This document shows, one piece after another, positions 20,605 through 63,873 of a DNA stretch of 64,000 nucleotides. Below the pieces are notes generated by a model. The model made no database searches and was not told where the DNA came from. It saw nothing but the letters and a program-made list of their open reading frames with translations. The translations under genes and the position numbers were made by a program. Where the stretch lies: the IMG/VR virus record IMGVR_UViG_3300047321_000238, positions 62,001-126,000 of that record; one strand, written 5' to 3'. Position 1 is the first letter of the stretch, and each line of letters opens with the position of its first letter.

Positions 20605-20605
20605 G

Positions 20606-21367
20606 ATGAATAAGATATTAAAAAACAGTATAGTAATTATTGTTCTTCTTATGGCATATTCTTTTATAAGTAATTTTGCAAATATAAATGCTTTGTTTAT
20701 GCCAAAAGTAGATACAATATTCGAAGACTTTAAAACATTATTTGCTAATGGAATGCTAACAGAATCTATATTAAAATCATTTTTAAGGATAACAATAGCT
20801 ACAAGTATATCTTGTGCAATAAGTGTTCCTTTAGCATTACTTATATATAGTTCTAAAACATTAGATGATATTATATCACCTATAGCAAATATGTTTAGAT
20901 ATGTACCAATAACTGCTTTCGGCCCATTATTAATATTATGGGTTGGAATAGGCGAAGATATGAAGATAACATTCTTATTTTGTGCAACATTCTTTTATTT
21001 CTTACCAACATTGGTAATGAACATGAAAGAAATAGACATAAGACTTATAGAAACAGGTTACACAATGGGAATGAGTAAGTTCCAAGTAATAACTAAAATT
21101 GTAGTACCTTATACGTTACCAAGTATATGCCAAAGCATTCTTATGATGTATGGAATAGGTTGGTCGTATATAGTTGTAGCAGAAGCTACAAATGCAACAA
21201 GAGGCTTAGGGTATTTAATCAATATAGGTTCTGCAAGAGGTAGAACTGATATGGTATTTATGTCTATGATAACTATAATGGCAATAAGCTTTATAGTAGA
21301 CACAATTGGTAATAAATTAATAGCTAAATGTTTTAGCTGGAAGTTTAAAAAAATAGAGGAAAATTAA
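20606..21367 (+). CDS. ABC transporter permease (SsuC/TauC/NitT type)
   Basis: FRYVPITAFGPLLILWVGIGE, EtGyTMG EAA loop, WSYIVVAE, RGLGYLI. Confidence 0.9.
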   Translation: MNKILKNSIVIIVLLMAYSFISNFANINALFMPKVDTIFEDFKTLFANGMLTESILKSFLRITIATSISCAISVPLALLIYSSKTLDDIISPIANMFRYVPITAFGPLLILWVGIGEDMKITFLFCATFFYFLPTLVMNMKEIDIRLIETGYTMGMSKFQVITKIVVPYTLPSICQSILMMYGIGWSYIVVAEATNATRGLGYLINIGSARGRTDMVFMSMITIMAISFIVDTIGNKLIAKCFSWKFKKIEEN

Positions 21368-24486: not shown

Positions 24487-24705
24487 ATGGATTTGTATAT
24501 AAACATAATAAAAGCTCAGTTAGATAACATAATACAATCTAATAAACATTATGTCGCAGCTAAGGGCGATAAAGGTAAGAAACAGTCAGCTTTAGTACTG
24601 GCTACTAATATATGCAAACTAGAAAAAATTATAGAAGAATCATTAAAAGAGATTGAAAAAGCAGGAGTAGATGTAGATAGAGTAAGAATGAGGTTAGATT
24701 TATGA
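24487..24705 (+). CDS. hypothetical protein
   Basis: AAGGGTG SD. Confidence 0.7.
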   Translation: MDLYINIIKAQLDNIIQSNKHYVAAKGDKGKKQSALVLATNICKLEKIIEESLKEIEKAGVDVDRVRMRLDL

Positions 24706-25331
24706 TAGAATGTACTGGTTTATCTATGAAATATGGAAAACAAGAAATCTTTAAAAACTTTAATCATACCTTTAAAGATAACTCAATAACAGCAATTATG
24801 GGTGAGTCAGGTAAAGGCAAGACTACATTAATTAAATGTATAGCAGGGCTTAATAAAGCTTATGAAGGACAGATTCTATATAAGAAGTCAAAGGAGGATG
24901 CCGCAGGAGATACCATCACTAAACCACATAAGGATATATTTATGATGCATCAAAGCTATACTAATTTTCCTTGGAAAAATTGTTTAGAAAATGTATTGTT
25001 TCCATTAGAAATTAATGGTAAGATAAGTGAAGCAGATATACTAGAAGCAAAAGAGATTTTGGCTTCTGTTAATCTAAATGGATATGAAGATAAACATCCT
25101 AGTGAATTATCTGGAGGAATGAATCAAAGGTTAGCAATGGCAAGAATGCTAATGGCCAAGCCTAGAGTTCTTTTGATGGACGAGCCTATGAGTGCGTTAG
25201 ATAGCGTAACTAGAGGTAAAGTACAGGATTTATTGATGAATTTCCAAAGGAAACTAAAAAATACAATCATATTAATAACACATGATGAAAGCGAAGCTAA
25301 GAGAATATCAAGTGAGATAATAAATTTTTAG
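24702..25331 (+). CDS. ABC transporter ATP-binding protein
   Basis: Walker A GESGKGKTT, signature LSGGMNQR, Walker B LLMDEP, ITHD. Confidence 0.95.
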   Translation: MIECTGLSMKYGKQEIFKNFNHTFKDNSITAIMGESGKGKTTLIKCIAGLNKAYEGQILYKKSKEDAAGDTITKPHKDIFMMHQSYTNFPWKNCLENVLFPLEINGKISEADILEAKEILASVNLNGYEDKHPSELSGGMNQRLAMARMLMAKPRVLLMDEPMSALDSVTRGKVQDLLMNFQRKLKNTIILITHDESEAKRISSEIINF

Positions 25332-36093: not shown

Positions 36094-37524
36094 ATGTTAA
36101 AAGATATTAGAAAAAATCCAATTAAGTTAACTGATTGCTATAACTTATCACATGAGGAATTAAAATGTAATACAGACTTTGAAGTTTCTCATATGTATAA
36201 TAGAGCAGACGGAATGTTATTATATGGCTTTAAAGAAATTGCATTAGGTATTCTTAGTATAAAGATTACAGAAGAAATGGTTGAAGATGCAGCAGTTGAT
36301 GCTGAAGAATTAAACTTAACTTTCCCTAAAGATTTATGGATGAGAGTAGTTACAGAATGTAGAGGATATGTTCCATTAGAAGTTCAATCAGTTCCAGAAG
36401 GAACATGGTGCCCTAAAGGAACTCCATTTGCTCAAGTAAGAAATACCGTAGAAGGTTTCGGAGAAATGGTTACATGGTTTGAAGGCGTGTTTATGATGGC
36501 GTATTTCCCATCTACATGTGCAACTAGAGCATTTGAAATGAGAAACTATTTAGAAGAAAAGAAAGAACAATACGGATACGATGATAGCTTTCTATGGAGA
36601 TTTCATAGTTTTGGATTCAGAGGACATAAAAGCTTGGAAGATGCGTACTTCGCAGGAACTGCATGGTCAACATTCTTATTAGGAACAGATGATTTCCATA
36701 TAAGACAACACATGTCAGAAGATACTGTTATGGGAAGTATTGCAGCGTTAGCTCATAAAGTTACGCAACAATATGATAATGAATATGATTGTTTCATTCG
36801 TTCAATAGATTATGCAGCTGCAAGCGGTAAGAATATCGTAGCTTTAGTTATAGATACTTACAATGCATATAGAGTTATTCAAGAATATGTGTTAAAATTA
36901 GCTGAGTATGCTAAAGGAAAAGGAGTTCATATTGTATTTAGACCAGATAGTGGAGACATTTTTGGACAAGCAATGGCTATATATACAAGAGTTTCAACTG
37001 CAGGTTATAAAAATGTAAGTGTAATAATTGGAGAAGGTATGAGTTTTAATAATGCTAAATCAATGGATAAAAAATTTGAGTTAATGGGAGTGCCATTAAC
37101 ATTTATTGCTTATGGTATAGGAGCAGGATTCTATAAAGATATAGAAAGAGATACTTTAGGATGGGCAATGAAGACTGGTTATTCTAATGGAGCTCCAAGA
37201 ATGAAAGTAGTTAAGTCGGATCCATTTAAGCAATCAATACCTGGGATTGTAGATTTAATGTACGATGAAGATGATTTAATGACAGTATATATAGAAAAAG
37301 AAGATAATGCTGCTGATTCAATATATGAATGTATATATAGATATGATCTTGATCAAAATACAACACCTTCTATGAAAGACTTATCTTATATTCCTGCACA
37401 AGCTATTAAGGATAGAGCATACAATACTACAGGATATAGAGTTGGAGAAAAAATACAAGAAAGAATAATCATATCTAATGAAATTAAAGAACTTATAAAT
37501 GTAATAACAAAAAAATATGAATAA
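36094..37524 (+). CDS. nadV: nicotinamide phosphoribosyltransferase (NAMPT/NadV)
   Basis: TDCYNLSH, FHSFGFRG, GTD, AHKV, VIDTY, RPDSG, GEG, GIGAG. Confidence 0.85.
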   Translation: MLKDIRKNPIKLTDCYNLSHEELKCNTDFEVSHMYNRADGMLLYGFKEIALGILSIKITEEMVEDAAVDAEELNLTFPKDLWMRVVTECRGYVPLEVQSVPEGTWCPKGTPFAQVRNTVEGFGEMVTWFEGVFMMAYFPSTCATRAFEMRNYLEEKKEQYGYDDSFLWRFHSFGFRGHKSLEDAYFAGTAWSTFLLGTDDFHIRQHMSEDTVMGSIAALAHKVTQQYDNEYDCFIRSIDYAAASGKNIVALVIDTYNAYRVIQEYVLKLAEYAKGKGVHIVFRPDSGDIFGQAMAIYTRVSTAGYKNVSVIIGEGMSFNNAKSMDKKFELMGVPLTFIAYGIGAGFYKDIERDTLGWAMKTGYSNGAPRMKVVKSDPFKQSIPGIVDLMYDEDDLMTVYIEKEDNAADSIYECIYRYDLDQNTTPSMKDLSYIPAQAIKDRAYNTTGYRVGEKIQERIIISNEIKELINVITKKYE

Positions 37525-43141: not shown

Positions 43142-43831
43142 ATGATATTGAATAAAATAAATGATTTTTTTAAAGGATGGACAAAGCTAGATTTTGCTTG
43201 GCTATTAATAGCTAATGCAATCATGTTAGGATTATCTATCAGAAATGGTGATACAGTAGTATCTATGATATGTGCTGTAACAGGAATAGTTAGTGTTATA
43301 TTTGCAAGTAAGCAAATGACAGCTAATTATGTAGTAGGACTTATAAATGTAGCGTTATATGCTTATCTTTCATATCAAGCCAAATTATATGGAGATTTTC
43401 AATTAAATGCTTTCTTCTATGTACCAATGCAATTCATAGGATATTATATGTGGAATAAAGCTAAAAACAAATCATCAGAACATAAAGTTGAAGCTAAAAG
43501 ACTAACTGGAGAGCAAGCTATATTTATATCAGTAGGAACAATAGGAACTATATTGGTATACGCTAAAATATTAGATATGCTTAGAGGAAATATAACTTTA
43601 ATCGATTCAGCCTCTACAGTACTATCAGTGATAGCTATGATATTAATGGTTAAACAATATACTGAACAATGGTATATGTGGGTTCTTGTTAATATAGTAT
43701 CTATAGTAATGTGGGTAGTATCTTTATCACAAGGCACAGGAGATTTGGCTACATTATTAATGTGGGTAGTTTTCTTAATTAATTCTATATTTGGATTAGT
43801 TAATTGGAGAAAGGCTAGTAAGAAGGCTTAA
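43142..43831 (+). CDS. pnuC: nicotinamide riboside transporter PnuC
   Basis: LYGD, GYYMW, DSASTVLSVIAMILM, EQWYMWVLVNIVSI. Confidence 0.9.
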   Translation: MILNKINDFFKGWTKLDFAWLLIANAIMLGLSIRNGDTVVSMICAVTGIVSVIFASKQMTANYVVGLINVALYAYLSYQAKLYGDFQLNAFFYVPMQFIGYYMWNKAKNKSSEHKVEAKRLTGEQAIFISVGTIGTILVYAKILDMLRGNITLIDSASTVLSVIAMILMVKQYTEQWYMWVLVNIVSIVMWVVSLSQGTGDLATLLMWVVFLINSIFGLVNWRKASKKA

Positions 43832-46301: not shown

Positions 46302-46494
46302 TATGGTAGATAATAAAAAAGATAATGCATTTATTGAAAAAATTGCTAAAGAAATTGATGAAAATAAAATACACATAGGAATTGAAAATATATTAGAACT
46401 AGTTTATGATATGGGAGTTAAAGAAGGAAAAGCATTGGTAGTAAAAAATGCTGTTGAATTCATAAGTAAGTAAATAATCTTGAGGGGGATTAAA

Positions 46495-47553
46495 ATGAAT
46501 AAAATATCAGACATGCCAAAGAAAGGTGTATGGTTTGCTAAAGCATTACCACCACATAGAGGTCATTTAAGTACAATATTACAAGCTGCTACACAAGTAC
46601 AACAATTAGATGTAATTGTATCAGAGCATGAAGAAGGAAATGGTAAACTGTGTAGAAATGTCGGAATACCATATATGCCAGGAGCAAAAAGAGTACAATG
46701 GCTTAGTCAGGAATTAATGGACATGCCTCATATTACCGTTAAGTTACTTAATGAAAATAATATGCCTGTATATCCTAATGGATGGGATATGTGGACTCAA
46801 GAATTACAAAAAGTTGCAGGAGAAAAAATAGATATGTTTTTCTGCGGTAAAAAAGATATAGATGTATATGGACCAAAATTAAAGAGTTATTTTCCAGGAG
46901 TTAAAGTTACAGCGTATGATACAGATACTTGTTACTTTAATATATCAGCTACAGAGATCAGAAGTAATCCAATTAAGCATTGGGACTATATATTAGGACC
47001 AGCAAGACCATTCTTTGCTAAGAAAATATTAATAGCTGGAACTGAAAGCACAGGTAAGACTACTTTAACTAAAACTTTAGCTAAGATGTATCATACATCA
47101 TGGAGTGAAGAAGTAGGAAGATATTATGCAACGCAATATCTAGGAGGTAATGAAAATTACTTTACTGATGAAGACTTTACAAGAATAGCTCATTTGCAAG
47201 TTGAACAAGATCATCAAGCATTAAGAAACTGTAATAGAGTTTGTTTCTTTGATACAGACGCTACAGCAACAGATTACTTCAGTCAATTATATATGGGACA
47301 TAGCAATAGCATAGTTAGAAGCTATATAGATCCTGATAAGTATGACATAGTGTTCATGTTGAAGCCTGATGTTGAATGGGTAGATGATGGCATGAGATTA
47401 AATGGATCACAAGAGCAAAGAATTAAACTTCATAATAAATTAAAAGATATGTATGATAATTTAGGATTTAAAGTAGTTGAAGTAGGTGGAACATACCAAG
47501 AAAGACTTAAATTTATATTATCAAAAATAGATGAAATGATTGGGGGAAAATAA
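46495..47553 (+). CDS. nadR: NadR-like NMN adenylyltransferase / ribosylnicotinamide kinase
   Basis: PPHRGH (HxGH), NISATEIR, GTESTGKTT, FFDTD, WVDDGMR. Confidence 0.9.
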   Translation: MNKISDMPKKGVWFAKALPPHRGHLSTILQAATQVQQLDVIVSEHEEGNGKLCRNVGIPYMPGAKRVQWLSQELMDMPHITVKLLNENNMPVYPNGWDMWTQELQKVAGEKIDMFFCGKKDIDVYGPKLKSYFPGVKVTAYDTDTCYFNISATEIRSNPIKHWDYILGPARPFFAKKILIAGTESTGKTTLTKTLAKMYHTSWSEEVGRYYATQYLGGNENYFTDEDFTRIAHLQVEQDHQALRNCNRVCFFDTDATATDYFSQLYMGHSNSIVRSYIDPDKYDIVFMLKPDVEWVDDGMRLNGSQEQRIKLHNKLKDMYDNLGFKVVEVGGTYQERLKFILSKIDEMIGGK

Positions 47554-48132
47554 ATGAGAAAGCTATTAAGCGTAGATAAACAAACGGATAATAAATTCTT
47601 AAACATGTTTGTAGCAAACTATGAAGAAGACGGTGAAGAGTCTAAATACTTTATTGCATCAAGAAAAAAGAATGCAGAAGATTTAGATTGTATGACTGGT
47701 AAGATGGTAGCTGATGCAGTAATAATCGTTCCTGTATATACTAATGGAGATATATTATTTATTAAGCAATTTAGAAAACCTATAAATGATTATATATATG
47801 AATTTCCAGCAGGATTAATCGATGCAGGTGAAACTAGTAAACAAGCTGCAATAAGAGAGCTTCATGAAGAAACTGGATTAAGTGTAGTAAGTGCTAGAGA
47901 ATTAATCAAGCCTACGTATACATCAGTTGGAATGTCAGATGAAGCTGTAGGAATATATATAGCTGAAGTTCAAGGAGAACTATCTCAAGAATATCAAGAA
48001 AAAAGCGAGGATATAAATTTTGAAATAGTAAAAATAGATGACTTAGCAAAGTTCATTAAAGAAAACAAAGTAGCAATGCAAGCATCAATACTTTCTTTAT
48101 TCTTATATAGCATAGAAAAAGGAGAATATTAA
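47554..48132 (+). CDS. NUDIX hydrolase (ADP-ribose pyrophosphatase-like)
   Basis: KQFR, EFPAGLID.GE....AA.REL.EETG. Confidence 0.9.
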   Translation: MRKLLSVDKQTDNKFLNMFVANYEEDGEESKYFIASRKKNAEDLDCMTGKMVADAVIIVPVYTNGDILFIKQFRKPINDYIYEFPAGLIDAGETSKQAAIRELHEETGLSVVSARELIKPTYTSVGMSDEAVGIYIAEVQGELSQEYQEKSEDINFEIVKIDDLAKFIKENKVAMQASILSLFLYSIEKGEY

Positions 48133-52850: not shown

Positions 52851-52879
52851 TTGACAACTTGTCCATTGTTTGGTATATT
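52851..52879 (+). promoter_or_regulatory. sigma-A promoter driving the RNA cluster
   Basis: TTGACA-17 nt-TATATT with TG extension and A-rich UP-like region. Confidence 0.85.
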
Positions 52880-53086: not shown

Positions 53087-53173
53087 GGAAGAGTGGCCGA
53101 GATGGTTGATGGCGGCAGACTGTAAATCTGTTCTGTAAAAAGCACGTTGGTTCGAATCCAACCTTTTCCACCA
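53087..53173 (+). tRNA. tRNA-Tyr(GTA)
   Basis: Cloverleaf, long variable arm, CCA. Confidence 0.95.
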
Positions 53174-53412
53174 AAGTCTAAGGTTAAGATATATTCACTC
53201 AATTGACTTGAATTGAATAAAGTTACACATTAGGTTAGTAATACTTTGATTAAAGATATATTCATCAGAATATTGATAGTCAATTATAACTATACGTAAT
53301 ATGGATGTTTCTGAACTTCAGCCCCTGTGGTACATAAATATGTGAGAAATATCGGAGTATTCTAATTAGGAATATGTGTCTAGTAGTAGGTCGGGACTAG
53401 ACAAAATAATAT

Positions 53413-53488
53413 GGATAGATAGCTCAGATGGTAGAGCAGTGGATTGAAGATCCGCGTGTCCAAGGTTCGATTCCTTGTCTGTCCACCA
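53413..53488 (+). tRNA. tRNA-Phe(GAA)
   Basis: Cloverleaf, 76 nt, CCA. Confidence 0.95.
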
Positions 53489-53557
53489 GTAGGTTTTTGT
53501 TAGCTTTTGCCGTAGAACTCCTAGAGAGAGTCAAATCAAAAACTATCTCCACCATAT

Positions 53558-53634
53558 GGCTCTGTAGCTCAGTTGGAAGAGCATCCGTATTATTAAACGG
53601 AGTGTCGGAGGTTCAATTCCTCCCAAAGTCTCCA
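53558..53634 (+). tRNA. tRNA-like gene with 8-nt anticodon loop ATTATTAA (Asn-like?)
   Basis: D and T arms and CCA intact; TCCGT/ACGGA stem. Confidence 0.7.
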
Positions 53635-53697
53635 TTCATCCTTTTTATATTTTTATATTGTAGATACTCTCTATTATTGGGAGGGTATTTGCAACAT

Positions 53698-53772
53698 GGC
53701 TCATTAGTATAGCGGTTAGTACACTGCCCTGTCACGGCAGAAGCGGGAGTTCGATTCTCCCATAAGTCGCCA
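53698..53772 (+). tRNA. tRNA-Asp(GTC)
   Basis: Cloverleaf, CCA, one acceptor mismatch. Confidence 0.9.
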
Positions 53773-53831
53773 TAGGATTTTCTTTTGTCAGTTTCTTTCT
53801 AGATCAAAAAAGTAAACTGTAAAACCTATAT

Positions 53832-53920
53832 GGAGCAATACTCAAGTGGCTTAAGAGTCCAGTCTTGAAAACTGGTAGGCTGTAACAGGTGCGTAGGTTC
53901 GAATCCTACTTGCTCCGCCA
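53832..53920 (+). tRNA. tRNA-Ser(TGA)
   Basis: Cloverleaf, long variable arm, GCCA. Confidence 0.95.
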
Positions 53921-53986
53921 AGGCGTTAAGCCTATGTTTTCTTTAGACGTAAGTTTCTTTTCTCAAAAGCAAACACGTTGAATTAT

Positions 53987-54063
53987 GGGTTCTTAGCTCA
54001 GATGGCTAGAGCACTGGCCTCCAAATCCAGGTGTCCTAGGTTCGATTCCTAGAGGGCTCGCCA
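53987..54063 (+). tRNA. tRNA-Trp(CCA)
   Basis: Loop CT-CCA-AA, G73, CCA. Confidence 0.9.
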
Positions 54064-54140
54064 ATAAAGAGTAAAGTTGTACCGCTCTAATGTTAGTTAT
54101 TAGTGTACATCGCAAAGGAGAATGACTAACAAAACAATAT

Positions 54141-54231
54141 GGAACTGTACTCAAGAGGTTTAAGAGGAGCCCTTGCTAAGGGTTTAGACGAATTTATTCG
54201 TGCTAGGGTTCGAATCCCTACGATTCCGCCA
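54141..54231 (+). tRNA. tRNA-Ser(GCT)
   Basis: Cloverleaf, long variable arm, GCCA. Confidence 0.9.
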
Positions 54232-54570
54232 AGGGTAGTTCAACACACTTCTAGTAGAGTTTCTACAAGTGGCAAGAGTAAATGTATGCAGTTAACTTAT
54301 AAGAACATTGCATAGCAGTATAGAACCAGTGGTAATGATCCACCGATACTGCAAAAGGTTTTAATGCTTAGTAGGAACAACTAAGTAGTGTACGCTATCT
54401 ACAAAAGAGTATCCTCATGGTGCTGATACTTGAAAGATGGATAAGGGTGAACCACTTGAAACCCGATAGCAAAAGACCTAATAAGTAGCAAAATTAGGTT
54501 TAAAACTCTAAATATAATTAGGGATTAAAGCAATTACAAATGCAAGTTTAGGACTTTTATAATAGTCCTT
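54232..54570 (+). ncRNA. candidate structured ncRNA (~340 nt)
   Basis: Many nested stems (GCAGTAT/ATACTGC, GCTATC/GATAGC, ACCTAAT/ATTAGGT); no ORF. Confidence 0.45.
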
Positions 54571-54575
54571 TATAT

Positions 54576-54651
54576 GCTGAATTAGCACAATTGGCAGTGC
54601 ATCTGACTTGTAATCAGAAGGTTAAGAGTTCGAATCTCTTATTCAGCTCCA
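54576..54651 (+). tRNA. tRNA-Thr(TGT)
   Basis: Perfect cloverleaf, CCA. Confidence 0.95.
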
Positions 54652-54780
54652 AAACCAGTATTCGGTGGCAATCTAATTGCACTAGCTGACGAGGTTTGTC
54701 ACACAGAGATAGACGTTAATTCTCGGAGTCTTTATTAGGAAGACATCTAGACAGTATGGTAGGGACTGTCCAACCGATAT

Positions 54781-54855
54781 AGCATTGTTGAGGAGTGGTT
54801 TCTCGCTAGCTCAAAAAGCTAGAGCACACTGGTTCGATTCCAGTCTTTGCGACCA
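54781..54855 (+). tRNA. degenerate tRNA-like gene (loop TCAAAAA)
   Basis: D, anticodon and T stems paired, ACCA end; acceptor has 3 mismatches; no U33. Confidence 0.6.
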
Positions 54856-54993
54856 TAATCTATGTAAGTCTTCACAGATTCTAATTGTGTGAAGCCGAAA
54901 CTTATATCAACGCGGTAAGGATAAAGTATTAGATAAACCATCCTATTAGCAGAGATTACGGGTGCAGAAGTTCGTAGTTATAGCATCCACCAA

Positions 54994-55069
54994 CAGGATA
55001 TAGGACAGTTGGTAGTCCGCCACATTTGGGATGTGGAGATCCTAGGTTCGAGTCCTAGTATCCTGACCA
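54994..55069 (+). tRNA. tRNA-Pro(TGG)
   Basis: C1-G72, A73, TT-TGG-GA loop, CCA. Confidence 0.95.
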
Positions 55070-55305
55070 AGGTCGTCTGTAGTTTAAGCGAATTCTTTAC
55101 TAACTAGCTTAACAAAAAACTTACTGTTGATTCAAAGCATGCCTGCGATCATGGCCAATGATTTGTTAGTTTTAATCATAAGCTGAATCAAAGTGTTCTT
55201 AGGAAGTACAATATGCATATCGTTCAAAAGCGAAAGATTTCATAGATGGCGTTTATAATAAGAACAACAATAAAGTAATGAGCCACCTGCCATTACTTTA
55301 AATAT

Positions 55306-55383
55306 CAGGATGTAGCTCAGTTGGTAGAGTGCTGGCACGATTATAGCCAGAAGTCGTAGGTTCAATCCCTACTGTCCTGACCA
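55306..55383 (+). tRNA. tRNA-Pro-like body with 9-nt anticodon loop ACGATTATA
   Basis: CAGGATG/TGTCCTG-ACCA; CTGGC/GCCAG stem. Confidence 0.8.
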
Positions 55384-55390
55384 AAGTGTG

Positions 55391-55471
55391 GGGAGCACAT
55401 ATTGCGGAAAGCTTTGTAACCAAAAGTAAGGAATGTTGTTCTGGCATAAAGTTCCTTTGCTCCCATGGTTA
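55391..55471 (+). ncRNA. novel ~74-nt branched RNA, copy 1, plus ATGGTTA tail
   Basis: GGGAGCA/TGCTCCC closing stem; covaries with copy 2. Confidence 0.75.
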
Positions 55472-55667
55472 TTTACTTGGTAGCTATACCAAGACTATAA
55501 AATAGTCGTATCTTAGGAACGTAAGCACTAAGCGTCATCAGGCTAAAGACTAATAATTAATTTATTAGAGATGAGAACCCTGACCAATGTATTGAAAGCT
55601 TAACGGATGTTGGAAACGTTAGTTTTTAGGGTGATAACCTTGAGTAGTGTCTAAATAATCATAATAT

Positions 55668-55746
55668 CAGGATGTAGCTCAGTTGGTAGAGCACTGGCAT
55701 TAATAGGAGCCAGAGGTCGTAGGTTTGAGTCCTACTGTCCTGACCA
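55668..55746 (+). tRNA. tRNA-Pro-like body with 10-nt anticodon loop ATTAATAGGA
   Basis: Same acceptor and anticodon stems as 55306. Confidence 0.8.
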
Positions 55747-55754
55747 TATCTGTC

Positions 55755-55836
55755 GAGAGTACAGTTTGCAGAAAAGCTTAAGAACCTAAAGCAGGGAATG
55801 TTGTTCTGGTATAAAGTTCCCTTACTCTCATGGTTA
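55755..55836 (+). ncRNA. novel ~74-nt branched RNA, copy 2, plus ATGGTTA tail
   Basis: GAGAGTA/TACTCTC closing stem. Confidence 0.75.
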
Positions 55837-55840
55837 ACAA

Positions 55841-55915
55841 TGGGGAATAGTCAAGCGGAAAGACAGTGGATTTTGATTCCACGATGCGAAGGTTCGAACC
55901 CTTCTTCCTCAGCCA
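55841..55915 (+). tRNA. tRNA-Gln(TTG)
   Basis: U1-A72, G73, TT-TTG-AT loop, CCA. Confidence 0.95.
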
Positions 55916-56010
55916 CCTACAATAGTAGGAGTTTATTATAAGTCCGATTTCAATCTTTTATTAGCTATTAATGGCTCGCCAAAGTAATCATTAATAGCTA
56001 ATATAATATC

Positions 56011-56086
56011 ATGAAGGTAGGATAGTTGGTAGTCCACCAGTTTGTGGCACTGGTTTACGCGAGTTCGAGTCTCGTCCTTCATTCCA
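56011..56086 (+). tRNA. tRNA-His(GTG), atypical acceptor end
   Basis: TT-GTG-GC loop; A1-U72, U73, no genomic G-1. Confidence 0.85.
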
Positions 56087-56087
56087 T

Positions 56088-56164
56088 GGCTTCATAGCTC
56101 AGTTGGCTAGAGCAATCGGTTCATACCCGAAAGATCATTGGTTCAAGTCCAATTGAAGCCACCA
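56088..56164 (+). tRNA. tRNA-Met(CAT), elongator type
   Basis: GGTTCATACCCG arm as in Firmicute elongator Met; CCA. Confidence 0.9.
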
Positions 56165-56372
56165 TAATAAAGAAGATATTCAATATTTGTAAATAATTTC
56201 TCCCGTAGAATGTGTTTATGTGTGTGGTTGAATGTCTTTTTTATTTTCTAAATATTTACCGTTTATACTTAAACTTATTAGATACTTGCAAACAATACTG
56301 AATAAAACTGTTGTGGCAAGAGTATATAAATGGTATGGTGTAAGTATCTAATAATACAAAAAGGAGTATACT

Positions 56373-56696
56373 ATGAGAGAACACACTTTAATATTAGAAA
56401 AAGTAACACCTAGTAAAACTGAATTAGTAGATAACAAATTTTACAGATTAGAATTCACTGGTTTAAATAATCAAATATATACTGCATTTGTTGACAAAAA
56501 AGATGTTGATAATGAAGTTATACTTTTGAATGATACATTTGATGTAATAAAAGTAGATATATTTAGAGATAATTTAAATGAATCAGTTAATGATAATATA
56601 TTTGAGACACAACCTCATTTAAAGTATGAAGGAGTCTATTCTTATATTACAATAGATATAAATCATACAGATCCAGCAGTGTTCAATAGAATATAA
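56373..56696 (+). CDS. hypothetical protein embedded in the tRNA cluster
   Basis: AAGGAG SD. Confidence 0.75.
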   Translation: MREHTLILEKVTPSKTELVDNKFYRLEFTGLNNQIYTAFVDKKDVDNEVILLNDTFDVIKVDIFRDNLNESVNDNIFETQPHLKYEGVYSYITIDINHTDPAVFNRI

Positions 56697-56869
56697 TGAA
56701 AAATCACCGAGAAATAAGCCTGATTATGCCAATTAGTTCGTCACCTCTAGTTGAAGGTTCATTCTAATAGGTACGAGTTTGCTACGTTAAATGTTTGTAA
56801 TCAGTAAAAGTTCTAAAATGTTATTATGAATTCGAATAGTAATGACGTGCTAGTGTGCACAGGTTGACT

Positions 56870-56990
56870 AGTAACATGGAGAAGGCGGTCCATCTTCGAT
56901 AGAAGACCAGGGGTTCGATTCCCTTTGTTATCGCCACAAAACGGTAATAGTTTGGTACGGATTAGAGATTCGACTCCTCTACTCTCCACA
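56870..56990 (+). ncRNA. tRNA-like element with two T-loop hairpins
   Basis: AGGGG-TTCGATT-CCCTT and TAGAG-ATTCGACTC-CTCTA; internal GCCA. Confidence 0.6.
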
Positions 56991-56996
56991 AAATAT

Positions 56997-57091
56997 GTGG
57001 GTATGGTGAAATTGGCAGACACAGGCAAAAAGCGGCAACTCAGATGATATGCTCAGTTGTGTGAAGGTTCGAATCCTTCTACCCTACATCA
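56997..57091 (+). tRNA. tRNA-Leu-like body with collapsed anticodon arm
   Basis: GTGAAATTGGCAGACAC D arm, long variable stem, perfect T arm; no anticodon stem; ends ATCA. Confidence 0.65.
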
Positions 57092-57092
57092 T

Positions 57093-57173
57093 GGGTTAAT
57101 AGTTCAATTGGTTAGAATACCGTTTGCTTACAAACAACGGAGATGTAGGTTCGAGTCCTACAAGGGCCTGCCA
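57093..57173 (+). tRNA. tRNA-like gene with 11-nt loop containing CTTACAA (Val-like)
   Basis: CCGTT/AACGG stem, T arm, GCCA; weak acceptor. Confidence 0.65.
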
Positions 57174-57187
57174 AATAAATATAATAT

Positions 57188-57256
57188 GGGCCGATAGCTC
57201 AGTGGCAGAGCATATGACTTTTACTCATATACGTGGGTTCGATTCCCAATAGCCTA
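57188..57256 (+). pseudogene. degenerate tRNA-Lys-like gene, 8-nt loop CTTTTTAC, no CCA
   Basis: D and T arms present; acceptor mismatched. Confidence 0.6.
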
Positions 57257-57429
57257 TAATAGTTATTATCACAATTATAAGAATCACAGAGTGGGTTCTT
57301 GGTATTTAGGAATGACGTCAAAGGTAATGCATGTTAGTGGGACGTTGAAGGGTGCTCGTAACTTTAGCTAAGTTAGGAAGAGCATACCTAGTAGTTGTCT
57401 GAGGGTTGGCAATCACAAAAAAATAATAT

Positions 57430-57500
57430 GAGTTTGTAGCTCAGTGGTAGAGCATAGGAATTTTAATCCTAGACATAGGTTCGATTCCTGTCATAGCTCA
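57430..57500 (+). tRNA. tRNA-Lys(TTT), somewhat degenerate, CCA not encoded
   Basis: TAGGA-ATTTTAA-TCCTA arm; T arm intact. Confidence 0.7.
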
Positions 57501-57862
57501 AAAACAAAAGGACATTAATCATGAGGAGGTAAATAGGTCTTATGATTTAAATTTTTGGAGTTATAATTGAGGGAATATAAATAGCCAAAAACCCGTTTCT
57601 CCTTAGTGCCTATTTGCTAATGCGAGAAGGTTATAACTTGTGAGTATAGAAAGTCCTCTATACTTGATAATGAGAATAGTTGCCCGTATTCCCTTGTGGT
57701 TAAGACAATTATTCAATAGTTCGTGAGGCTACCAGTCTGGCAACAGATGAGAGTTTGTGGTAATCTCGAAACCACCAAATCGACAAGTGAGTGAAAAGCT
57801 CACAAAAAAAATCCTAATTCTCTTCTAATCGAAAGAGCAAGTTTTAGTATGCTTGCTCTTTT
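57501..57862 (+). ncRNA. candidate structured ncRNA ending in a terminator
   Basis: AGTATAGA/TCTATACT, GAATAGTTG/CAATTATTC, TCTG-GCAA-CAGA, GTGAG/CTCAC; AAAGAGCAAG/CTTGCTCTTT hairpin. Confidence 0.45.
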
Positions 57863-57869
57863 ATATTAT

Positions 57870-57952
57870 GCCGATATAGTTCAAGGTGAGCACTAAGGGA
57901 GCTCCGCTAACGTGGCTTAGAAGTGTAGGTTCGATTCCTATAGTCGGCACCA
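57870..57952 (+). tRNA. tRNA-Thr-like body with 18-nt insertion-type anticodon loop
   Basis: GCCGATA...AGTCGGC-ACCA; CTAAG/CTTAG stem around GGAGCTCCGCTAACGTGG. Confidence 0.75.
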
Positions 57953-58374: not shown

Positions 58375-59175
58375 ATGATTAAAAAAACAATAGCAATTCT
58401 ATTAATGATTGTTGTAACAATACCATCATTGAAAACAAATGCTACTGTTTTAGTACCTGAGCAAAACAGTACAACAACAATTAAAGTTGAGGACAAATTA
58501 TTAAATCCTACAAGTTATCAGTACCTTACAGTGACAGATTTCAGATTGAAGAATTTTATTGAAATTGTCGAAGAAGCGAAAAAACTAAAAGAGGAGATAA
58601 AAGCAGCACAAGAAAAACAAGCAGCAATAGATAAAGCAAGACAAGCCGTAATCGATGACAATAGTAGAAAGAATAATGTTCATGTTTATCAAGAAAATCT
58701 TACTAGTGTGTCAGGAATTACAGTAGAAGAATTAAATCAAGTATTTTATAAAATTGGAAAACCAAAAATGGCAAAGTATTCTCAAGCATTTATTGATGCA
58801 GAGAAACAATACGGAGTCAATGCACTATTTATAGCTTCAATAGTTGCACAAGAATCTGGCTGGGCCACCAAAGCTGGTGGAACTAATGGTACTAACTTAA
58901 CTGGGCATGCAGTATATAATGCTCAAGCGACAGGAACTACTTTCAATTCAGGTTATGAAGGTATACTAGAAACCGCAAGACTATTAAAAGAAGATTACTT
59001 GACATCAAGTGGAAAATATTTTAATGGATATAGCGTAGAAGATGTAAATCTACATTATTGTTTATTACAAGATATGAAGACTACTGATTATAAATGGTCG
59101 GTAGCTATTACAAATATAGAAAATACTTTTGAAAAAGTTTATCAACACGATGTAAAAACATTAGAACAAATCTAA
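58375..59175 (+). CDS. secreted glucosaminidase (GH73-like) cell-wall hydrolase
   Basis: Signal peptide; AEKQYGVNALFIASIVAQESGW, NLTG. Confidence 0.85.
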   Translation: MIKKTIAILLMIVVTIPSLKTNATVLVPEQNSTTTIKVEDKLLNPTSYQYLTVTDFRLKNFIEIVEEAKKLKEEIKAAQEKQAAIDKARQAVIDDNSRKNNVHVYQENLTSVSGITVEELNQVFYKIGKPKMAKYSQAFIDAEKQYGVNALFIASIVAQESGWATKAGGTNGTNLTGHAVYNAQATGTTFNSGYEGILETARLLKEDYLTSSGKYFNGYSVEDVNLHYCLLQDMKTTDYKWSVAITNIENTFEKVYQHDVKTLEQI

Positions 59176-61155: not shown

Positions 61156-61875
61156 ATGATTTATAATTTAAGAAAACAAAAAGAAGACGAAAGGGATTTC
61201 ATGCTTTCAGCTATTGTGGCTCCGCAAGCAAAATTACCTAAGTCGGTTGACTTAAGAAGTCAATGTCCACCAATTTTTGATCAAGGGCAATTAGGCTCAT
61301 GTTCAGCTAATGCAGGATGTGCTAGTATTGCTACATTGCTCAAAAAACCAACCCTTACACTTTCTAGATTATATATGTATTATAGAGAAAGAGAAAAGGA
61401 AGGTACAATTTCACAAGACAGTGGTGCTCAAATGAGAGATATATGTAAAGTTGCAGCTGTAGGTGTATGTGAAGAAAAATACATGCCTTATGTAATTGCT
61501 GACTTTGCTAAGATTCCATCAACTGAAGCTACTGCAAATGCTGTAAACTACAAAGCAAATGGTTATCATGCAGTTAGAACATTAAATGAAATTAAACAAG
61601 TTTTAGCTTTAGGTTCAACAGTTCTTACTGGTATGCAAGTCTTTGAAAGTTTTGAATCAGCAACTGTTGCAAAAACAGGAGTAGTTCCAATGCCAAAATC
61701 TAACGAACAAAACTTAGGCGGACATGCTGTAGAGTTCGTAGGTTATGAAGATGCTAAGAAAAGACTTATTGTAAGAAATTCTTGGGGAACTGCATGGGGA
61801 GATAAGGGATATTTCTATATGCCTTACGACTTCATAACACAAGGATTCGCATTCGATTTTTGGGTGCTAGTTTAA
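61156..61875 (+). CDS. papain-like (C1) cysteine peptidase
   Basis: DQGQLGSCSANA, GGHAV, RNSWG..WGDKGYF. Confidence 0.95.
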   Translation: MIYNLRKQKEDERDFMLSAIVAPQAKLPKSVDLRSQCPPIFDQGQLGSCSANAGCASIATLLKKPTLTLSRLYMYYREREKEGTISQDSGAQMRDICKVAAVGVCEEKYMPYVIADFAKIPSTEATANAVNYKANGYHAVRTLNEIKQVLALGSTVLTGMQVFESFESATVAKTGVVPMPKSNEQNLGGHAVEFVGYEDAKKRLIVRNSWGTAWGDKGYFYMPYDFITQGFAFDFWVLV

Positions 61876-61896
61876 AATTGAATAGAGAATGATTCT

Positions 61897-61928
61897 AAAA
61901 CCCTACATGTTAATTCGTGTAGGGTTTT
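61897..61928 (+). terminator. Rho-independent terminator
   Basis: AAAACCCTACA/TGTAGGGTTTT. Confidence 0.8.
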
Positions 61929-62001
61929 AATATTATTCTTTTATAGAATAAATATAAAATAAATGATAGAATATAAACATATAAAACAAGGAGGAAACAT
62001 A

Positions 62002-62601
62002 ATGAATACAAGCAATTTAGTGCCAATGGTTATAGAAAGAGAAGGTAACTCTGAAAGGGCAATGGATTTAATCAGTAGAATGATGAAAGACAGGATTATA
62101 TTTCTTAATGGAGAAGTAAATGATATGTCAGCAAATCTATTAGTATCACAACTAATATTTTTAGAAGCAGATAGCCCAAACCAACCAATAACAATGTATA
62201 TCAACAGTCCAGGTGGTTCAGTTACTGCAGGACTTGCAATCAAAAATACAATGCATTACGTAAAAAGTCCAGTATGGACAGTAGGAATGGGAATGTGTGC
62301 CTCTATGGGAGCATTCTTACTAGCGTCAGGGGAGCCAGGACATAGATCGGTATTGCCAGATACAACGGTAATGATACATCAAGTATTAGGTGGTGCAGAA
62401 GGACAAGTTACCGATATGAAATTAAGAGTAGAATTTGCAGAAAGTCTTAAGATTAAATTAAATAAATACCTTTCACAATATACACAAGGAAAAGTAGACT
62501 ATGATACAATGGTAGCTCTGTGTGAAAGAGATAATTTTTTAACAGCTGAAAAAGCGTTAGAATTAGGATTAATAGATGAAATAGTAGAAAAACAAGTATA
62601 A
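62002..62601 (+). CDS. clpP: ATP-dependent Clp protease proteolytic subunit
   Basis: YINSPGGSVTAG, CASMGAFLL, MIHQ, RDNFL; start after AAGGAGG. Confidence 0.95.
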   Translation: MNTSNLVPMVIEREGNSERAMDLISRMMKDRIIFLNGEVNDMSANLLVSQLIFLEADSPNQPITMYINSPGGSVTAGLAIKNTMHYVKSPVWTVGMGMCASMGAFLLASGEPGHRSVLPDTTVMIHQVLGGAEGQVTDMKLRVEFAESLKIKLNKYLSQYTQGKVDYDTMVALCERDNFLTAEKALELGLIDEIVEKQV

Positions 62602-62616
62602 GAGGAGGCATAACTA

Positions 62617-63873
62617 ATGAGTAATGAAAAGAAAATTTGTGGATTTTGTGGCAAAACAGAAGGAGCAATGATAAGAGGAGTTTCTAGTTTTATATGCTTC
62701 GATTGTTTAGGGATTTGTAATGAAAAAATCAAAGGCGTAAAATCTAAAGGAAAACAATTAAAGCTTATAGCTAATTTAAAGCCATCAGCTATTAAAAATA
62801 TGTTAAACGAGTACGTAATTGATCAAGATATTGCTAAGGAAAAATTAGCAGTAGCTATTTATAATCATTATAAGATGAATAAGTACTTTGATGAACATGA
62901 TGGCAATCCACCAATCGAGATTGAAAAATCTAATGTAATTTTACTAGGTCCAACAGGTTCAGGTAAAACACATATAGTTAAGACATTAGCAAAAGAATTA
63001 GGGATTCCACTTGGAATTGCAGATGCTACTGGATTAACTGAAGCAGGATACGTTGGAGAAGACGTTGAAAATTGTATAAGAAAGTTAATTGAAAATGCAG
63101 ATGGAGACGTAGAAAAAGCAGCTAGAGGAATAATCTATATAGATGAAATCGATAAGATTTGCCGTAAAGGTGAAAATGTCTCTGTTTCAAGAGACGTATC
63201 TGGAGAAGGAGTTCAACAAGCTCTATTAAAATTAGTTGAAGGTACGATTGCAGAAGTTCCACCAAAGGGAGGAAGAAAGCATCCAGATCAAGAATGTATT
63301 AAGATTGATACATCAAGAATACTATTTATAGTAGGAGGATCTTTTGAAGGTATAGAAAAAACTATAGCTAAAAGAAAACAAGGTAAATCTACTATGGGAT
63401 TTGGTTCTAAAATAGTAGATACAAAGAAAGCTGAATTTAATGAATACATCCACGATGTAGTTGTTGATGATATAAAGAAGTTTGGAATGTTACCTGAATT
63501 CTTAGGAAGATTCCCTGTTATAGCTACACTGAATGAATTGAATGAAGAAGCTTTAATTAAAATATTAACCGAGCCAAAAAATTCTTTAGTTAAGCAATAT
63601 ACAGAACTATTAAAGATGGATTCAATCGATCTTATTATTGAACCTGGAGCACTTGCAGCAATAGCACATAAAGCTATTGAAAGAAAAACTGGTGCAAGAA
63701 GTTTAAGAGCAATAGTAGATGAAAAATTACTAGACTACATGTACAAGTTGCCAGATGATGAGTTGGCAGACACGATTACTATAACAAAAGAAGTAATTGA
63801 AGAAAATGCAGAAGCTGTTATAACTCATAGAGAACCAACACCAGAAGAAGAAATTGAACAAATAGCAGAATAA
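62617..63873 (+). CDS. clpX: ATP-dependent Clp protease ATPase subunit
   Basis: CGFCG..C..C zinc domain, GPTGSGKT, YIDEIDK, RDVSGEGVQQ, GGRKHP, MGF loop, GARSLR. Confidence 0.95.
   Translation: MSNEKKICGFCGKTEGAMIRGVSSFICFDCLGICNEKIKGVKSKGKQLKLIANLKPSAIKNMLNEYVIDQDIAKEKLAVAIYNHYKMNKYFDEHDGNPPIEIEKSNVILLGPTGSGKTHIVKTLAKELGIPLGIADATGLTEAGYVGEDVENCIRKLIENADGDVEKAARGIIYIDEIDKICRKGENVSVSRDVSGEGVQQALLKLVEGTIAEVPPKGGRKHPDQECIKIDTSRILFIVGGSFEGIEKTIAKRKQGKSTMGFGSKIVDTKKAEFNEYIHDVVVDDIKKFGMLPEFLGRFPVIATLNELNEEALIKILTEPKNSLVKQYTELLKMDSIDLIIEPGALAAIAHKAIERKTGARSLRAIVDEKLLDYMYKLPDDELADTITITKEVIEENAEAVITHREPTPEEEIEQIAE

What the first reader, a model, noticed from the sequence alone, without database searches (positions are those of the whole stretch)
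55306..55836. Duplicated cassette: aberrant tRNA-Pro body + covarying 74-nt RNA whose tail is complementary to the tRNA CCA end
Seen twice (362 nt apart): a tRNA-like gene, a 7-8-nt spacer, then a branched RNA. The closing stem changes from GGGAGCA/TGCTCCC to GAGAGTA/TACTCTC (two compensatory pairs), and the inner stem from AGGAA/TTCCT to GGGAA/TTCCC (a third). The loops GAAAG..AACC.AAA and TGTTGTTCTGG(C/T)ATAAAG are conserved. Both copies end in ATGGTTA, which can pair with the partner's TGACCA 3' end (6-7 bp). Known: T-box antiterminators (UGGN) and RNase P (GGU) bind tRNA NCCA in this way. Inference: an undescribed two-component RNA system in which a partner RNA caps or senses the acceptor end of a non-decoding tRNA.
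Basis: partly seen in the sequence, partly recalled or inferred. Interest (0 to 1): 0.9.

Follow-up and report, generated by a model that had tools for sequence, protein, structure and literature searches.

The report
Duplicated orphan RNA beside aberrant tRNAs
An uncultivated giant phage carries, inside its tRNA gene array, two copies of a real but so far unique 74-base folded RNA, each placed just after a non-decoding copy of a proline tRNA; the proposed "capping" of the tRNA end by this RNA is not supported by related phages.

Summary
Two cassettes lie 362 nt apart. Each has a tRNA-Pro-derived cloverleaf with a 9- or 10-nt anticodon loop, a 7-8-nt spacer, and a 74-75-nt three-way-junction RNA ending in AUGGUUA. 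Two helices of that RNA carry three compensatory double changes and no broken pair (simulation P about 4e-5). The 16-nt apical loop and the tail are almost invariant.

The RNA matches no Rfam family, even at E<=10. It has no exact-pattern or BLAST match in IMG/VR, GenBank phages, JGI metagenomes or GTDB genomes.

- UGGU:ACCA is a 4-bp match shared by 7 of the 16 tRNA ends in the array.
- The same tail also pairs with the element's own AACC loop (7 bp in copy A, 4 in B).
- Neither pairing covaries.
- The closest relative (L086) keeps the aberrant tRNA but not the element or any UGGU. A distant relative (L088) keeps an element-like sequence with no tRNA-like beside it.

Best reading (confidence 0.4): a lineage-restricted small structured RNA, co-transcribed in the poly-tRNA precursor and punctuated by non-decoding tRNA bodies. 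Its working surface is probably the invariant loop (core AUGUUGUUCU). Function is unproven. Interest is moderate.

The parts
52851..52879 (+). Strong sigma-70-type promoter (TTGACA-17-TATATT with TG), the only good promoter upstream of the tRNA array. It implies that the cassettes are transcribed as part of one poly-tRNA precursor.
   Evidence: 11 of 12 hexamer matches. No promoter-like or terminator-like site lies at the cassettes.
55261..55269 (+). AGAACAACA in the 5' leader of tRNA-like A. It is the exact complement of the apical-loop core UGUUGUUCU and is a possible cis or trans pairing site (inferred).
   Evidence: only 2 plus-strand copies in 64 kb (0.86 expected on both strands); conserved in the L086 leader (3196). 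The L086 trailer holds that locus's only TTGTTCTG (3342).
55306..55383 (+). tRNA-like A: a tRNA-Pro-type body (C1-G72, A73, encoded CCA) with a 9-nt anticodon loop ACGAUUAUA. Non-decoding.
   Evidence: (52.0 bits).
55384..55390 (+). 7-nt spacer AAGUGUG.
55391..55464 (+). Element A, a 74-nt three-way junction. Closing stem 55391-55397 with 55458-55464. P2 55411-55415 with 55423-55427, loop GUAACCA 55416-55422. P3 55428-55434 with 55451-55457, invariant 16-nt loop 55435-55450.
   Evidence: (106.3 bits to model R1).
55465..55471 (+). Tail AUGGUUA of copy A. It is complementary to the own P2 loop (7 bp) and to ACCA (4 bp accessible).
55668..55746 (+). tRNA-like B: the same tRNA-Pro-type body with a 10-nt anticodon loop AUUAAUAGGA. 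It is the ortholog of L086 3213-3296, which has a 15-nt loop.
   Evidence: (56.7 bits).
55747..55754 (+). 8-nt spacer UAUCUGUC.
55755..55829 (+). Element B, 75 nt. Closing stem 55755-55761 with 55823-55829. P2 55776-55780 with 55788-55792, loop 55781-55787. P3 55793-55799 with 55816-55822, loop 55800-55815.
   Evidence: (111.3 bits).
55830..55836 (+). Tail AUGGUUA of copy B. tRNA-Gln starts only 4 nt further on, at 55841.

Best explanation
The 74-nt element is a lineage-restricted, recently duplicated small structured RNA. It is made as part of the phage's single poly-tRNA transcript.

Fold: a three-way junction in which a 7-bp closing helix stacks on a 7-bp helix (P3) that presents an invariant 16-nt loop. 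A short hairpin (P2) presents AACC, which can pair with the GGUU of the 3' tail to form a pseudoknot.

Role of the tRNA-like: each copy follows a tRNA-Pro-derived cloverleaf that has lost decoding ability (anticodon loops of 9-15 nt) but keeps everything the tRNA-processing enzymes recognise. I read these bodies as punctuation or processing handles, like plant-mitochondrial t-elements. They would delimit, or remain fused to, the neighbouring non-tRNA RNAs.

Mode of action: the element most likely acts through sequence-specific recognition of its apical loop (core AUGUUGUUCU). The partner could be an AGAACAACA-type sequence, one of which lies in the cassette's own leader, or a protein.

Shown: the duplication, the two covarying helices, loop and tail invariance, the tRNA-Pro origin of the cloverleaf and selection on it, co-transcription context, and absence from known families and from close relatives.

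Inferred: processing, the pseudoknot, the loop as working surface, and any biological role.
For: Structure and constraint:
- Three compensatory pairs and no broken pair in 14 bp. Simulation gives P about 4e-5.
- Loop plus tail differ at 1 of 23 positions, against 7 of 21 for the other unpaired parts (p=0.019).

Retention of the loop core in relatives:
- The loop core is the only part kept in relatives. The L088 Met-Gln spacer aligns with score 35-37 against a null of 19 +/- 3 (0 of 1000 shuffles), including the 12-mer GAAUGUUGUUCU.
- The plus-strand 9-mer TGTTGTTCT occurs only in these elements among the window, L086, L087, L088 and L089.
- L086 keeps TTGTTCTG once, in the tRNA-like's trailer.
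- The complementary AGAACAACA sits in the leader in both the window and L086.

tRNA-like as a selected, non-decoding body:
- 100% of cloverleaf pairs are kept, with anticodon-stem compensation, while the loops drift between 9, 10, 15 and 9 nt.
- The body matches a normal tRNA-Pro.

Transcription context:
- One promoter lies ahead of the array, with no terminator at the cassettes.

Precedents:
- t-elements act as RNase P/Z signals (PMC1920247).
- RNase P processes small phage RNAs such as M3 and the C4 antisense RNA (PMC11143913).
Against: - Only two copies exist in one genome, so the comparative power is low.
- The closest relative, L086, lacks the element. The function is therefore dispensable or quickly replaced.
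- The L088 relative folds differently.
- No trans target for the loop stands out from shuffled queries within the window. The 9-bp leader match has roughly a 3% chance of arising by position alone.
- The pseudoknot loses 2 of its 6 pairs in copy B without compensation.
- In Firmicutes an encoded CCA blocks RNase Z (own knowledge). How the element would be separated from the tRNA-like is therefore unclear.
- No expression data exist.
Confidence: 0.4

Rival explanations
1. The element's UGGU tail pairs with the ACCA end of the adjacent non-decoding tRNA, in cis in the precursor or in trans after processing. This would cap it against charging or exonucleases, or sense its state, in a T-box-like manner.
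For: - The nested MFE and partition function of each whole cassette pair ACCA(U) with (A)UGGU, with p about 0.4 in A and 0.8 in B.
- The tail is invariant between copies.
- T-box UGGN:NCCA pairing is an established precedent (own knowledge).
Against: - Only 4 bp are accessible, at -2.9 kcal/mol.
- The match fits 7 of the 16 tRNA ends in the array.
- There is no covariation.
- The tail has a stronger competing partner in the element's own loop.
- The L086 aberrant tRNAs at 3213 and 788 have no UGGU-bearing partner.
- The L088 element-like sequence has CAUUG in place of CAUGG and no tRNA-like neighbour.
- There is no T-box match.
Confidence: 0.12
2. The element is a structured but essentially functionless by-product of a tandem duplication in a fast-evolving tRNA array, or a decaying spacer. 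It would be kept only as an insulating fold between tRNAs.
For: - It is restricted to one genome.
- It is absent at the syntenic site of the 79% relative and of L087 and L089.
- The array holds other degenerate tRNA-like relics and a CCCTGACCA remnant at 55579.
- The L088 relative has a different fold.
Against: - Three compensatory substitutions with none disruptive since the duplication argue for selection on the fold.
- Near-invariance of a 16-nt loop and the tail, against 33% divergence of the other unpaired parts, argues for sequence-specific constraint.
- The loop core is retained across phages whose neighbouring glucosaminidase proteins are only 51% identical.
Confidence: 0.2
3. The element is a new class of self-cleaving ribozyme that releases the 3' end of the upstream tRNA-like, analogous to theta or HDV-like ribozymes next to phage tRNAs.
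For: - Position 7-8 nt after a tRNA 3' end.
- Compact 74-nt fold with possible pseudoknot and invariant unpaired nucleotides.
- The helix order P1-P2-P3-P3'-P1'-P2' resembles the HDV nesting.
- Theta ribozymes set the precedent (PMC10879173).
- A relative encodes RtcB beside the array.
Against: - There is no P4 and no J4/2 with a catalytic C. Copy B has only 11 nt between the P1 3' strand and tRNA-Gln.
- An HDV-like descriptor gives 0 solutions in both copies.
- No ribozyme family is hit at E<=10.
- There is no hammerhead core.
Confidence: 0.08
4. The conserved sequence is a DNA-level site, such as a protein-binding or recombination site, or a small ORF (ATG at 55433), and not an RNA.
For: - The 12-mer GAATGTTGTTCT is conserved in L088 in a different predicted fold.
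- Some 3'-strand changes are synonymous in the MLFW(H/Y)KVPLL frame.
Against: - Compensatory changes on the 5' strand lie outside the ORF.
- The ORF is 16 codons in A, runs into tRNA-Gln in B, and is 3 codons in L088 (sequence).
- AGGA lies only 1-2 nt from the ATG.
- Paired double changes are the signature of a single-stranded fold.
Confidence: 0.04

Closest known systems
Plant-mitochondrial t-elements, and tRNA punctuation generally, e.g. MALAT1-mascRNA and gammaherpesvirus tRNA-like/miRNA transcripts (the last two from own knowledge)
   Same: Non-decoding tRNA-like cloverleaves are kept because tRNA-processing enzymes recognise them, and they delimit neighbouring RNAs (PMC1920247). Here the cloverleaf is conserved with compensation while the anticodon loop drifts.
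   Different: This is a bacteriophage setting, inside a true tRNA array. CCA is encoded. Processing has not been shown, and the neighbours are small ncRNAs and not mRNAs.
C4 antisense RNA of phages P1/P7 (Rfam RF01695)
   Same: It is a phage RNA of about 77 nt, cut out of a longer transcript by RNase P (PMC11143913). Its loops pair with complementary sites on the same transcript (own knowledge). Here the 74-nt RNA has a loop with an exact 9-nt complement in its own leader.
   Different: No covariance-model match at E<=10. The genomic context differs (a tRNA array, not an immunity operon). No target at a ribosome-binding site was found.
Theta / minimal HDV-like ribozymes next to phage tRNAs
   Same: A small structured RNA immediately 3' of a phage tRNA, with a nested helix order.
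   Different: It lacks P4 and the J4/2 catalytic cytosine. L3 is 16 nt, not 5-10. The spacer is 7-8 nt, not within 5 nt. The descriptor search gives zero hits.
T-box riboswitch antiterminator (UGGN:NCCA)
   Same: A UGGU able to pair with a tRNA ACCA end. The host is probably a Firmicute.
   Different: There is no Stem I, specifier loop or T-box sequence. UGGU lies in a 3' tail and not in a helix bulge. The element is not upstream of a regulated gene. There is no Rfam match.
Small stable RNAs in phage tRNA clusters (T4 species 1/2, rnaC/rnaD) and tRNA-spacer-derived RNAs such as E. coli 3'ETS-leuZ (own knowledge)
   Same: A non-tRNA RNA encoded within and co-transcribed with a tRNA operon. Function is unknown (T4) or exerted by base pairing (3'ETS).
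   Different: BLAST found no similarity to any GenBank phage, a collection that includes T4-like phages. Structure was not compared directly.
phi29 pRNA
   Same: A three-way-junction phage RNA that uses AACC:GGUU loop pairing (own knowledge).
   Different: No Rfam pRNA match. The size and context are wrong, and jumbo myoviruses do not use pRNA.

Membership tests
tRNA (RF00005), for the two tRNA-like genes | Cloverleaf scoring above the family gathering score | tested here: met
   52.0 and 56.7 bits against a gathering score of 29. All 21 cloverleaf pairs are kept.
tRNA (RF00005), for the two tRNA-like genes | 7-nt anticodon loop with U33 and a readable triplet | tested here: not met
   The loops are 9 nt (ACGAUUAUA) and 10 nt (AUUAAUAGGA). 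The L086 orthologs have 15 and 9 nt.
tRNA-Pro | C1-G72 and A73 acceptor identity; body similar to tRNA-Pro | tested here: met
   Alignment A4. Outside the anticodon arm the sequence is near-identical to L090 tRNA-Pro(UGG).
tRNA-Pro | G35-G36 anticodon | tested here: not met
   Copy A has no GG in the loop. Copy B has GG, but in a 10-nt loop with no defined anticodon position.
tRNA (RF00005), for the 74-nt element | Match to the tRNA covariance model, or sequence similarity to an array tRNA | tested here: not met
   No hit at E<=10. No significant local alignment to any of 20 tRNA or tRNA-like genes.
T-box riboswitch | Stem I with specifier loop, conserved T-box sequence, and UGGN in the antiterminator bulge | tested here: not met
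   No RF00230 hit at E<=10. UGGU lies in an unstructured 3' tail of a 74-nt RNA.
RNase P RNA | Match to the bacterial RNase P covariance models | tested here: not met
   No hit.
HDV-like / theta ribozyme | Nested double pseudoknot with P1, P2, P3 (short L3) and P4, and a catalytic C opening J4/2 | tested here: not met
   The descriptor search gives 0 solutions in both copies. Only 11 nt follow the P1 3' strand in copy B. There is no Rfam HDV-family hit.
HDV-like / theta ribozyme | Self-cleavage at the 5' end of P1 | not testable with these tools
   Needs an in vitro transcription and cleavage assay.
Hammerhead, twister, pistol, hatchet and other Rfam ribozymes | Covariance-model match | tested here: not met
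   Zero hits at E<=10 on each copy alone.
C4 antisense RNA (P1/P7) | Covariance-model match (RF01695) | tested here: not met
t-element-like processing handle | Ends of the tRNA-like coincide with processed RNA ends | not testable with these tools
   No transcript data are available. Only the conserved cloverleaf with a drifting loop supports it.
Y RNA (YrlA) | Covariance-model match; Ro60 gene nearby | tested here: not met
   Only chance-level YrlA hits elsewhere in the array (E 1.5-2.5), and none on the cassette. The D-arm pattern did pick up true YrlA-like loci in metagenomes (L101, L102), but these are unrelated.

The most novel reading that the evidence does not exclude
The element is a CCA-end-responsive RNA switch or a new ribozyme class. 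Its invariant UGGUUA tail would toggle between an internal mimic of a tRNA 3' end (loop UAACCA) and the real UGACCA end of the adjacent non-decoding tRNA-Pro body. This would couple the state or processing of that tRNA-like to exposure of the invariant apical loop. The result would be a phage-encoded RNA-only sensor of tRNA 3' ends outside the T-box family.
Probability: 0.07. Interest if true: 0.8.

Novelty: new variant of a known kind. Interest (0 to 1): 0.38.

Why it matters
Phage tRNA arrays are usually read only as codon-supply or anti-defence devices. This array shows that they can also carry selected non-tRNA RNAs and non-decoding tRNA bodies.

If the tRNA-Pro-like cloverleaves are processing handles, that would extend the 't-element / tRNA punctuation' principle to bacteriophages. 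If the 74-nt RNA has a specific partner, it adds a new small-RNA family to giant-phage biology.

The practical value is limited for now. The family has two members in one uncultivated genome, plus one degenerate relative.

Tried and rejected
- Rfam at gathering score and at E<=10, on the array and on each copy alone: nothing.
- Exact-pattern scans:
  - The 15-mer, the loop 17-mer and a gapped loop pattern in IMG/VR gave only the source contig plus chance coding hits.
  - The loop pattern in JGI metagenomes and in GTDB genomes gave zero.
- BLASTN of each element against 50,697 GenBank phages: chance hits only.
- Covariance model R1 on the window and four relatives: only the two known copies.
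- Aberrant-tRNA patterns in IMG/VR and metagenomes: only normal tRNA-Pro genes, the source contig, or YrlA-like Y RNAs.
- The 107-aa ORF inside the array as a handle for relatives: no homologs.
- A third, decayed cassette in the A-B spacer: the alignment is not significant.
- Homology of the L086 trailer to the element: not significant, although a TTGTTCTG core remains.
- A tRNA origin for the element: no significant similarity to any array tRNA.
- Trans targets of the apical loop in the window: no better than shuffled queries.
- HDV-like descriptor: zero solutions.
- Small-ORF reading: rejected, because the length is not conserved (3 codons in L088) and the 5'-strand compensation lies outside the ORF.
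- Promoter or terminator within the cassette: none.

Full report
**Context**

The window is a plus-strand-only stretch of a 247,883-bp uncultivated phage contig, IMGVR_UViG_3300047321_000238. Loci L010 and L085 are identical pieces of it.

Protein hits point to a giant myovirus of a spore-forming Firmicute:
- The best tblastn hits of the 684-aa protein are Bacillus Herelleviridae at about 60% identity.
- YyaC-like DUF1256 and DUF444 proteins are present.

A tRNA array runs from about 53087 to 57952. ARAGORN finds 16 genes and Rfam finds 19 tRNA hits. A single strong sigma-70-type promoter lies upstream at 52851-52879. There are no promoter-like or terminator-like sites at the cassettes. The cassettes are therefore most likely transcribed within one poly-tRNA precursor.

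**Checking the observation**

The two cassettes are real and lie 362 nt apart.
- Each has a tRNA-like gene (55306-55383; 55668-55746), a 7- or 8-nt spacer, and a 74- or 75-nt element (55391-55464; 55755-55829) followed by AUGGUUA.
- Both tRNA-likes pass the Rfam tRNA model (52.0 and 56.7 bits). Their anticodon loops are 9 and 10 nt.
- Outside the anticodon arm they are almost identical to an ordinary phage tRNA-Pro(UGG) found in IMG/VR (L090 8775-8850). They share C1-G72 and A73 with all tRNA-Pro genes of the related phages. "Aberrant tRNA-Pro body" is therefore correct.
- Across four aberrant and six normal tRNA-Pro sequences, all 21 cloverleaf pairs are kept in every sequence. This includes compensated anticodon stems in the aberrant ones. 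They are selected structures, not decaying pseudogenes.

The element folds as a three-way junction:
- a 7-bp closing stem;
- a 5-bp hairpin P2 whose loop contains AACC;
- a 7-bp helix P3 stacked on the closing stem, carrying a 16-nt loop GUUGUUCUGG(C/U)AUAAA.

The closing stem and P3 contain three double compensatory changes and no disrupted pair. If the 17 observed substitutions are placed at random, P(at least 3 compensatory pairs and none broken) is about 4e-5.

The P3 loop plus the tail differ at 1 of 23 positions. The other unpaired segments differ at 7 of 21 (p=0.019).

With only two sequences these are the limits of comparative inference. The column-shuffle control is uninformative (57 of 500).

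**Is it a known RNA?**

No. Rfam 15 gives nothing over the elements at gathering score, nothing at E<=10 over the array, and nothing at E<=10 when each copy is searched alone. That last search uses the laxest filters.

This excludes, at covariance-model level, tRNA, T-box, RNase P RNA, the HDV family, hatchet, hammerhead, twister, pistol, C4 antisense RNA, pRNA and Y RNA.

Theta ribozymes sit next to phage tRNAs, so I read the defining paper (PMC10879173). They are minimal HDV-like folds with a P4/L4 hairpin and a catalytic cytosine opening J4/2, and their cleavage site lies within 5 nt of the tRNA. Here:
- the helix order resembles HDV nesting, but one nucleotide and then the tail follow the P1 3' strand;
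- in copy B only 11 nt remain before tRNA-Gln;
- an explicit descriptor search finds no solution in either copy.

The element also shows no significant similarity to any tRNA of the array.

**Is it found elsewhere?**

- Exact-pattern scans of IMG/VR with three different patterns returned only the source contig plus chance hits in coding DNA.
- The loop pattern is absent from the JGI metagenome collection and from GTDB genomes.
- BLASTN against GenBank phages finds nothing.

Relatives of the phage were reached through the glucosaminidase gene at 58375-59175. This gave L086 (79% aa identity), L087 (59%), L088 (51%) and L089 (46%), all with syntenic tRNA arrays. Model R1, built from the two copies, finds no further copy in the window or in these loci.

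What the relatives show:
- **L086** has Pro, then a conserved 209-nt spacer, then one aberrant tRNA (3213-3296), then 97 nt, then Gln.
  - The aberrant tRNA has a 15-nt loop, AUUAAUUAUAAUAGA, and is clearly the ortholog of copy B.
  - The 97 nt are not significantly similar to the element and contain no UGGU.
  - A second L086 aberrant tRNA (788-865) also has no such partner.
- **L087 and L089** have Pro and Gln about 80 nt apart, with no cassette.
- **L088** has neither an aberrant tRNA nor any tRNA-like in its Met-Gln spacer.
  - That spacer nevertheless contains a segment significantly similar to the element (score 35-37 against 19 +/- 3; 0 of 1000 shuffles).
  - The segment includes the 12-mer GAAUGUUGUUCU, but in a different predicted fold and with CAUUG where the tail has CAUGG.

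So the two "components" are not coupled in evolution. The one feature that persists is the core of the apical loop.

**The tail**

UGGUUA can pair with UGACCA, but G72 and U71 are in the acceptor stem. The accessible match is ACCA:UGGU, at -2.9 kcal/mol. Seven of the 16 tRNAs in the array end in ACCA.

The tail is equally, or better, complementary to the element's own P2 loop: GUAACCA:UGGUUAU at -7.1 kcal/mol in A, and AACC:GGUU at -4.1 in B. AACC is the only conserved island in that loop.

Arguments each way:
- Against the pseudoknot: two flanking pairs are lost in B without compensation.

Neither pairing is proven. They are mutually exclusive, which leaves a switch as a low-probability but interesting possibility.

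**An additional lead**

The exact complement of the loop core, AGAACAACA, lies at 55261-55269 in the leader of tRNA-like A. It is one of only two plus-strand copies in 64 kb. It is conserved in the L086 leader. The only TTGTTCTG in 20.8 kb of L086 lies in the trailer of its aberrant tRNA. In L088 the motif is predicted to pair with a downstream GAACAG.

This suggests that the loop core works by base pairing. It is a positional coincidence test (roughly 3%), not covariation. A duplex-energy scan of the window found no target better than shuffled queries give.

**Explanation**

I commit to the following, at confidence 0.4.
- The element is a lineage-restricted, selected small RNA produced from the poly-tRNA precursor.
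- The tRNA-Pro-derived cloverleaves are non-decoding bodies, kept because processing enzymes recognise them. They serve as punctuation or handles for the adjacent non-tRNA RNAs.
- Plant-mitochondrial t-elements are the established precedent (PMC1920247). RNase P is known to process small phage RNAs such as M3 and the C4 antisense RNA (PMC11143913).
- The invariant apical loop is the working surface.

Rivals:
- a neutral or decaying structured spacer (0.2);
- a new self-cleaving ribozyme (0.08);
- a DNA site or small ORF (0.04). The ORF is 16 codons in A, reads into tRNA-Gln in B and is 3 codons in L088.

**Novelty and verdict**

The RNA is undescribed and the aberrant tRNA-Pro lineage is unusual. 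Non-tRNA RNAs inside phage tRNA operons and non-decoding tRNA-like handles are, however, known kinds. I therefore call this a new variant of a known kind.

Interest is moderate (0.38). The structure is real and selected. The family has two members in one uncultivated genome, the attractive CCA-capping mechanism lacks comparative support, and the function remains inferred.

Noticed in passing
window 55070-55275 (ortholog L086 3004-3212): The roughly 206-nt noncoding stretch between tRNA-Pro and tRNA-like A is about 92% identical to the relative, with a 68-nt perfectly identical block. That is better conserved than the neighbouring protein (79% aa). It is predicted to be closed by a terminal helix starting 2 nt after the tRNA-Pro CCA. 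It has no Rfam hit, and its 20-mer occurs nowhere else in the IMG/VR or GTDB collections. It is probably a separate structured ncRNA.
   Followed up: partly
window 55261-55269; L086 3196-3204 and 3342-3349: AGAACAACA in the leader of the aberrant tRNA is the exact complement of the element's loop core. It is conserved in L086, whose trailer holds that locus's only TTGTTCTG. This may be a leader-trailer or sRNA-target pairing.
   Followed up: partly
window 53558-53634; L086 788-865: A third aberrant tRNA-like gene, with an 8-nt anticodon loop (AUUAUUAA). Its positional ortholog in L086 has a tRNA-Pro-type acceptor and a 9-nt loop. Non-decoding tRNA bodies are a recurrent feature of this phage lineage.
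   Followed up: partly
window 54781-54852, 56870-56933, 57100-57161, 57435-57493: Four further tRNA-like hits seen by Rfam only and not called by ARAGORN. 57414-57488 is a 79% duplicate of the tRNA-Lys region. The array contains several degenerate or atypical tRNA-likes.
   Followed up: no
window 55579-55587: CCCTGACCA in the spacer between the cassettes looks like the 3' end of a lost tRNA-Pro-type gene. Alignment of the spacer to a cassette was not significant.
   Followed up: yes
window 36094-37524, 43142-43831, 46480-47553, 47554-48132: An NAD salvage set: nicotinamide phosphoribosyltransferase, a PnuC-type NMN transporter, a NadR-like NMN adenylyltransferase and a Nudix hydrolase. This is the kind of set phages use to counter NAD-depleting defence.
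   Followed up: no
window 19595-20371: A metallo-beta-lactamase-fold protein with sub-threshold similarity to the anti-Pycsar protein Apyc1 (35 bits; cut-off 50).
   Followed up: no
window 20570-21367, 21664-23718, 24702-25331: An ABC-transporter permease and ATPase flank a 684-aa protein of the widespread phage family phrog_1735. That protein is 60% identical to proteins of Bacillus Herelleviridae.
   Followed up: no
window 61156-63873: A papain-like protease, ClpP and a ClpX-like AAA+ ATPase lie in a row. This order is conserved in relatives L086-L089.
   Followed up: no
L086 1-413; L087 1654-3144: Relatives encode an RtcB RNA ligase and a DUF2828/DUF7788 protein directly beside or inside their tRNA arrays. 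The window has neither at the syntenic place.
   Followed up: no
L101 2660-2800; L102 1290-1430: The D-arm search pattern picked up permuted tRNA-like RNAs (T-arm before D-arm) just upstream of ORFs that begin like Ro60/TROVE proteins (MAKFNR / MSKFNR). By my reading these are YrlA-type Y RNAs, although neither the RNA nor the ORF was scanned against a family library. They are unrelated to the cassette.
   Followed up: no
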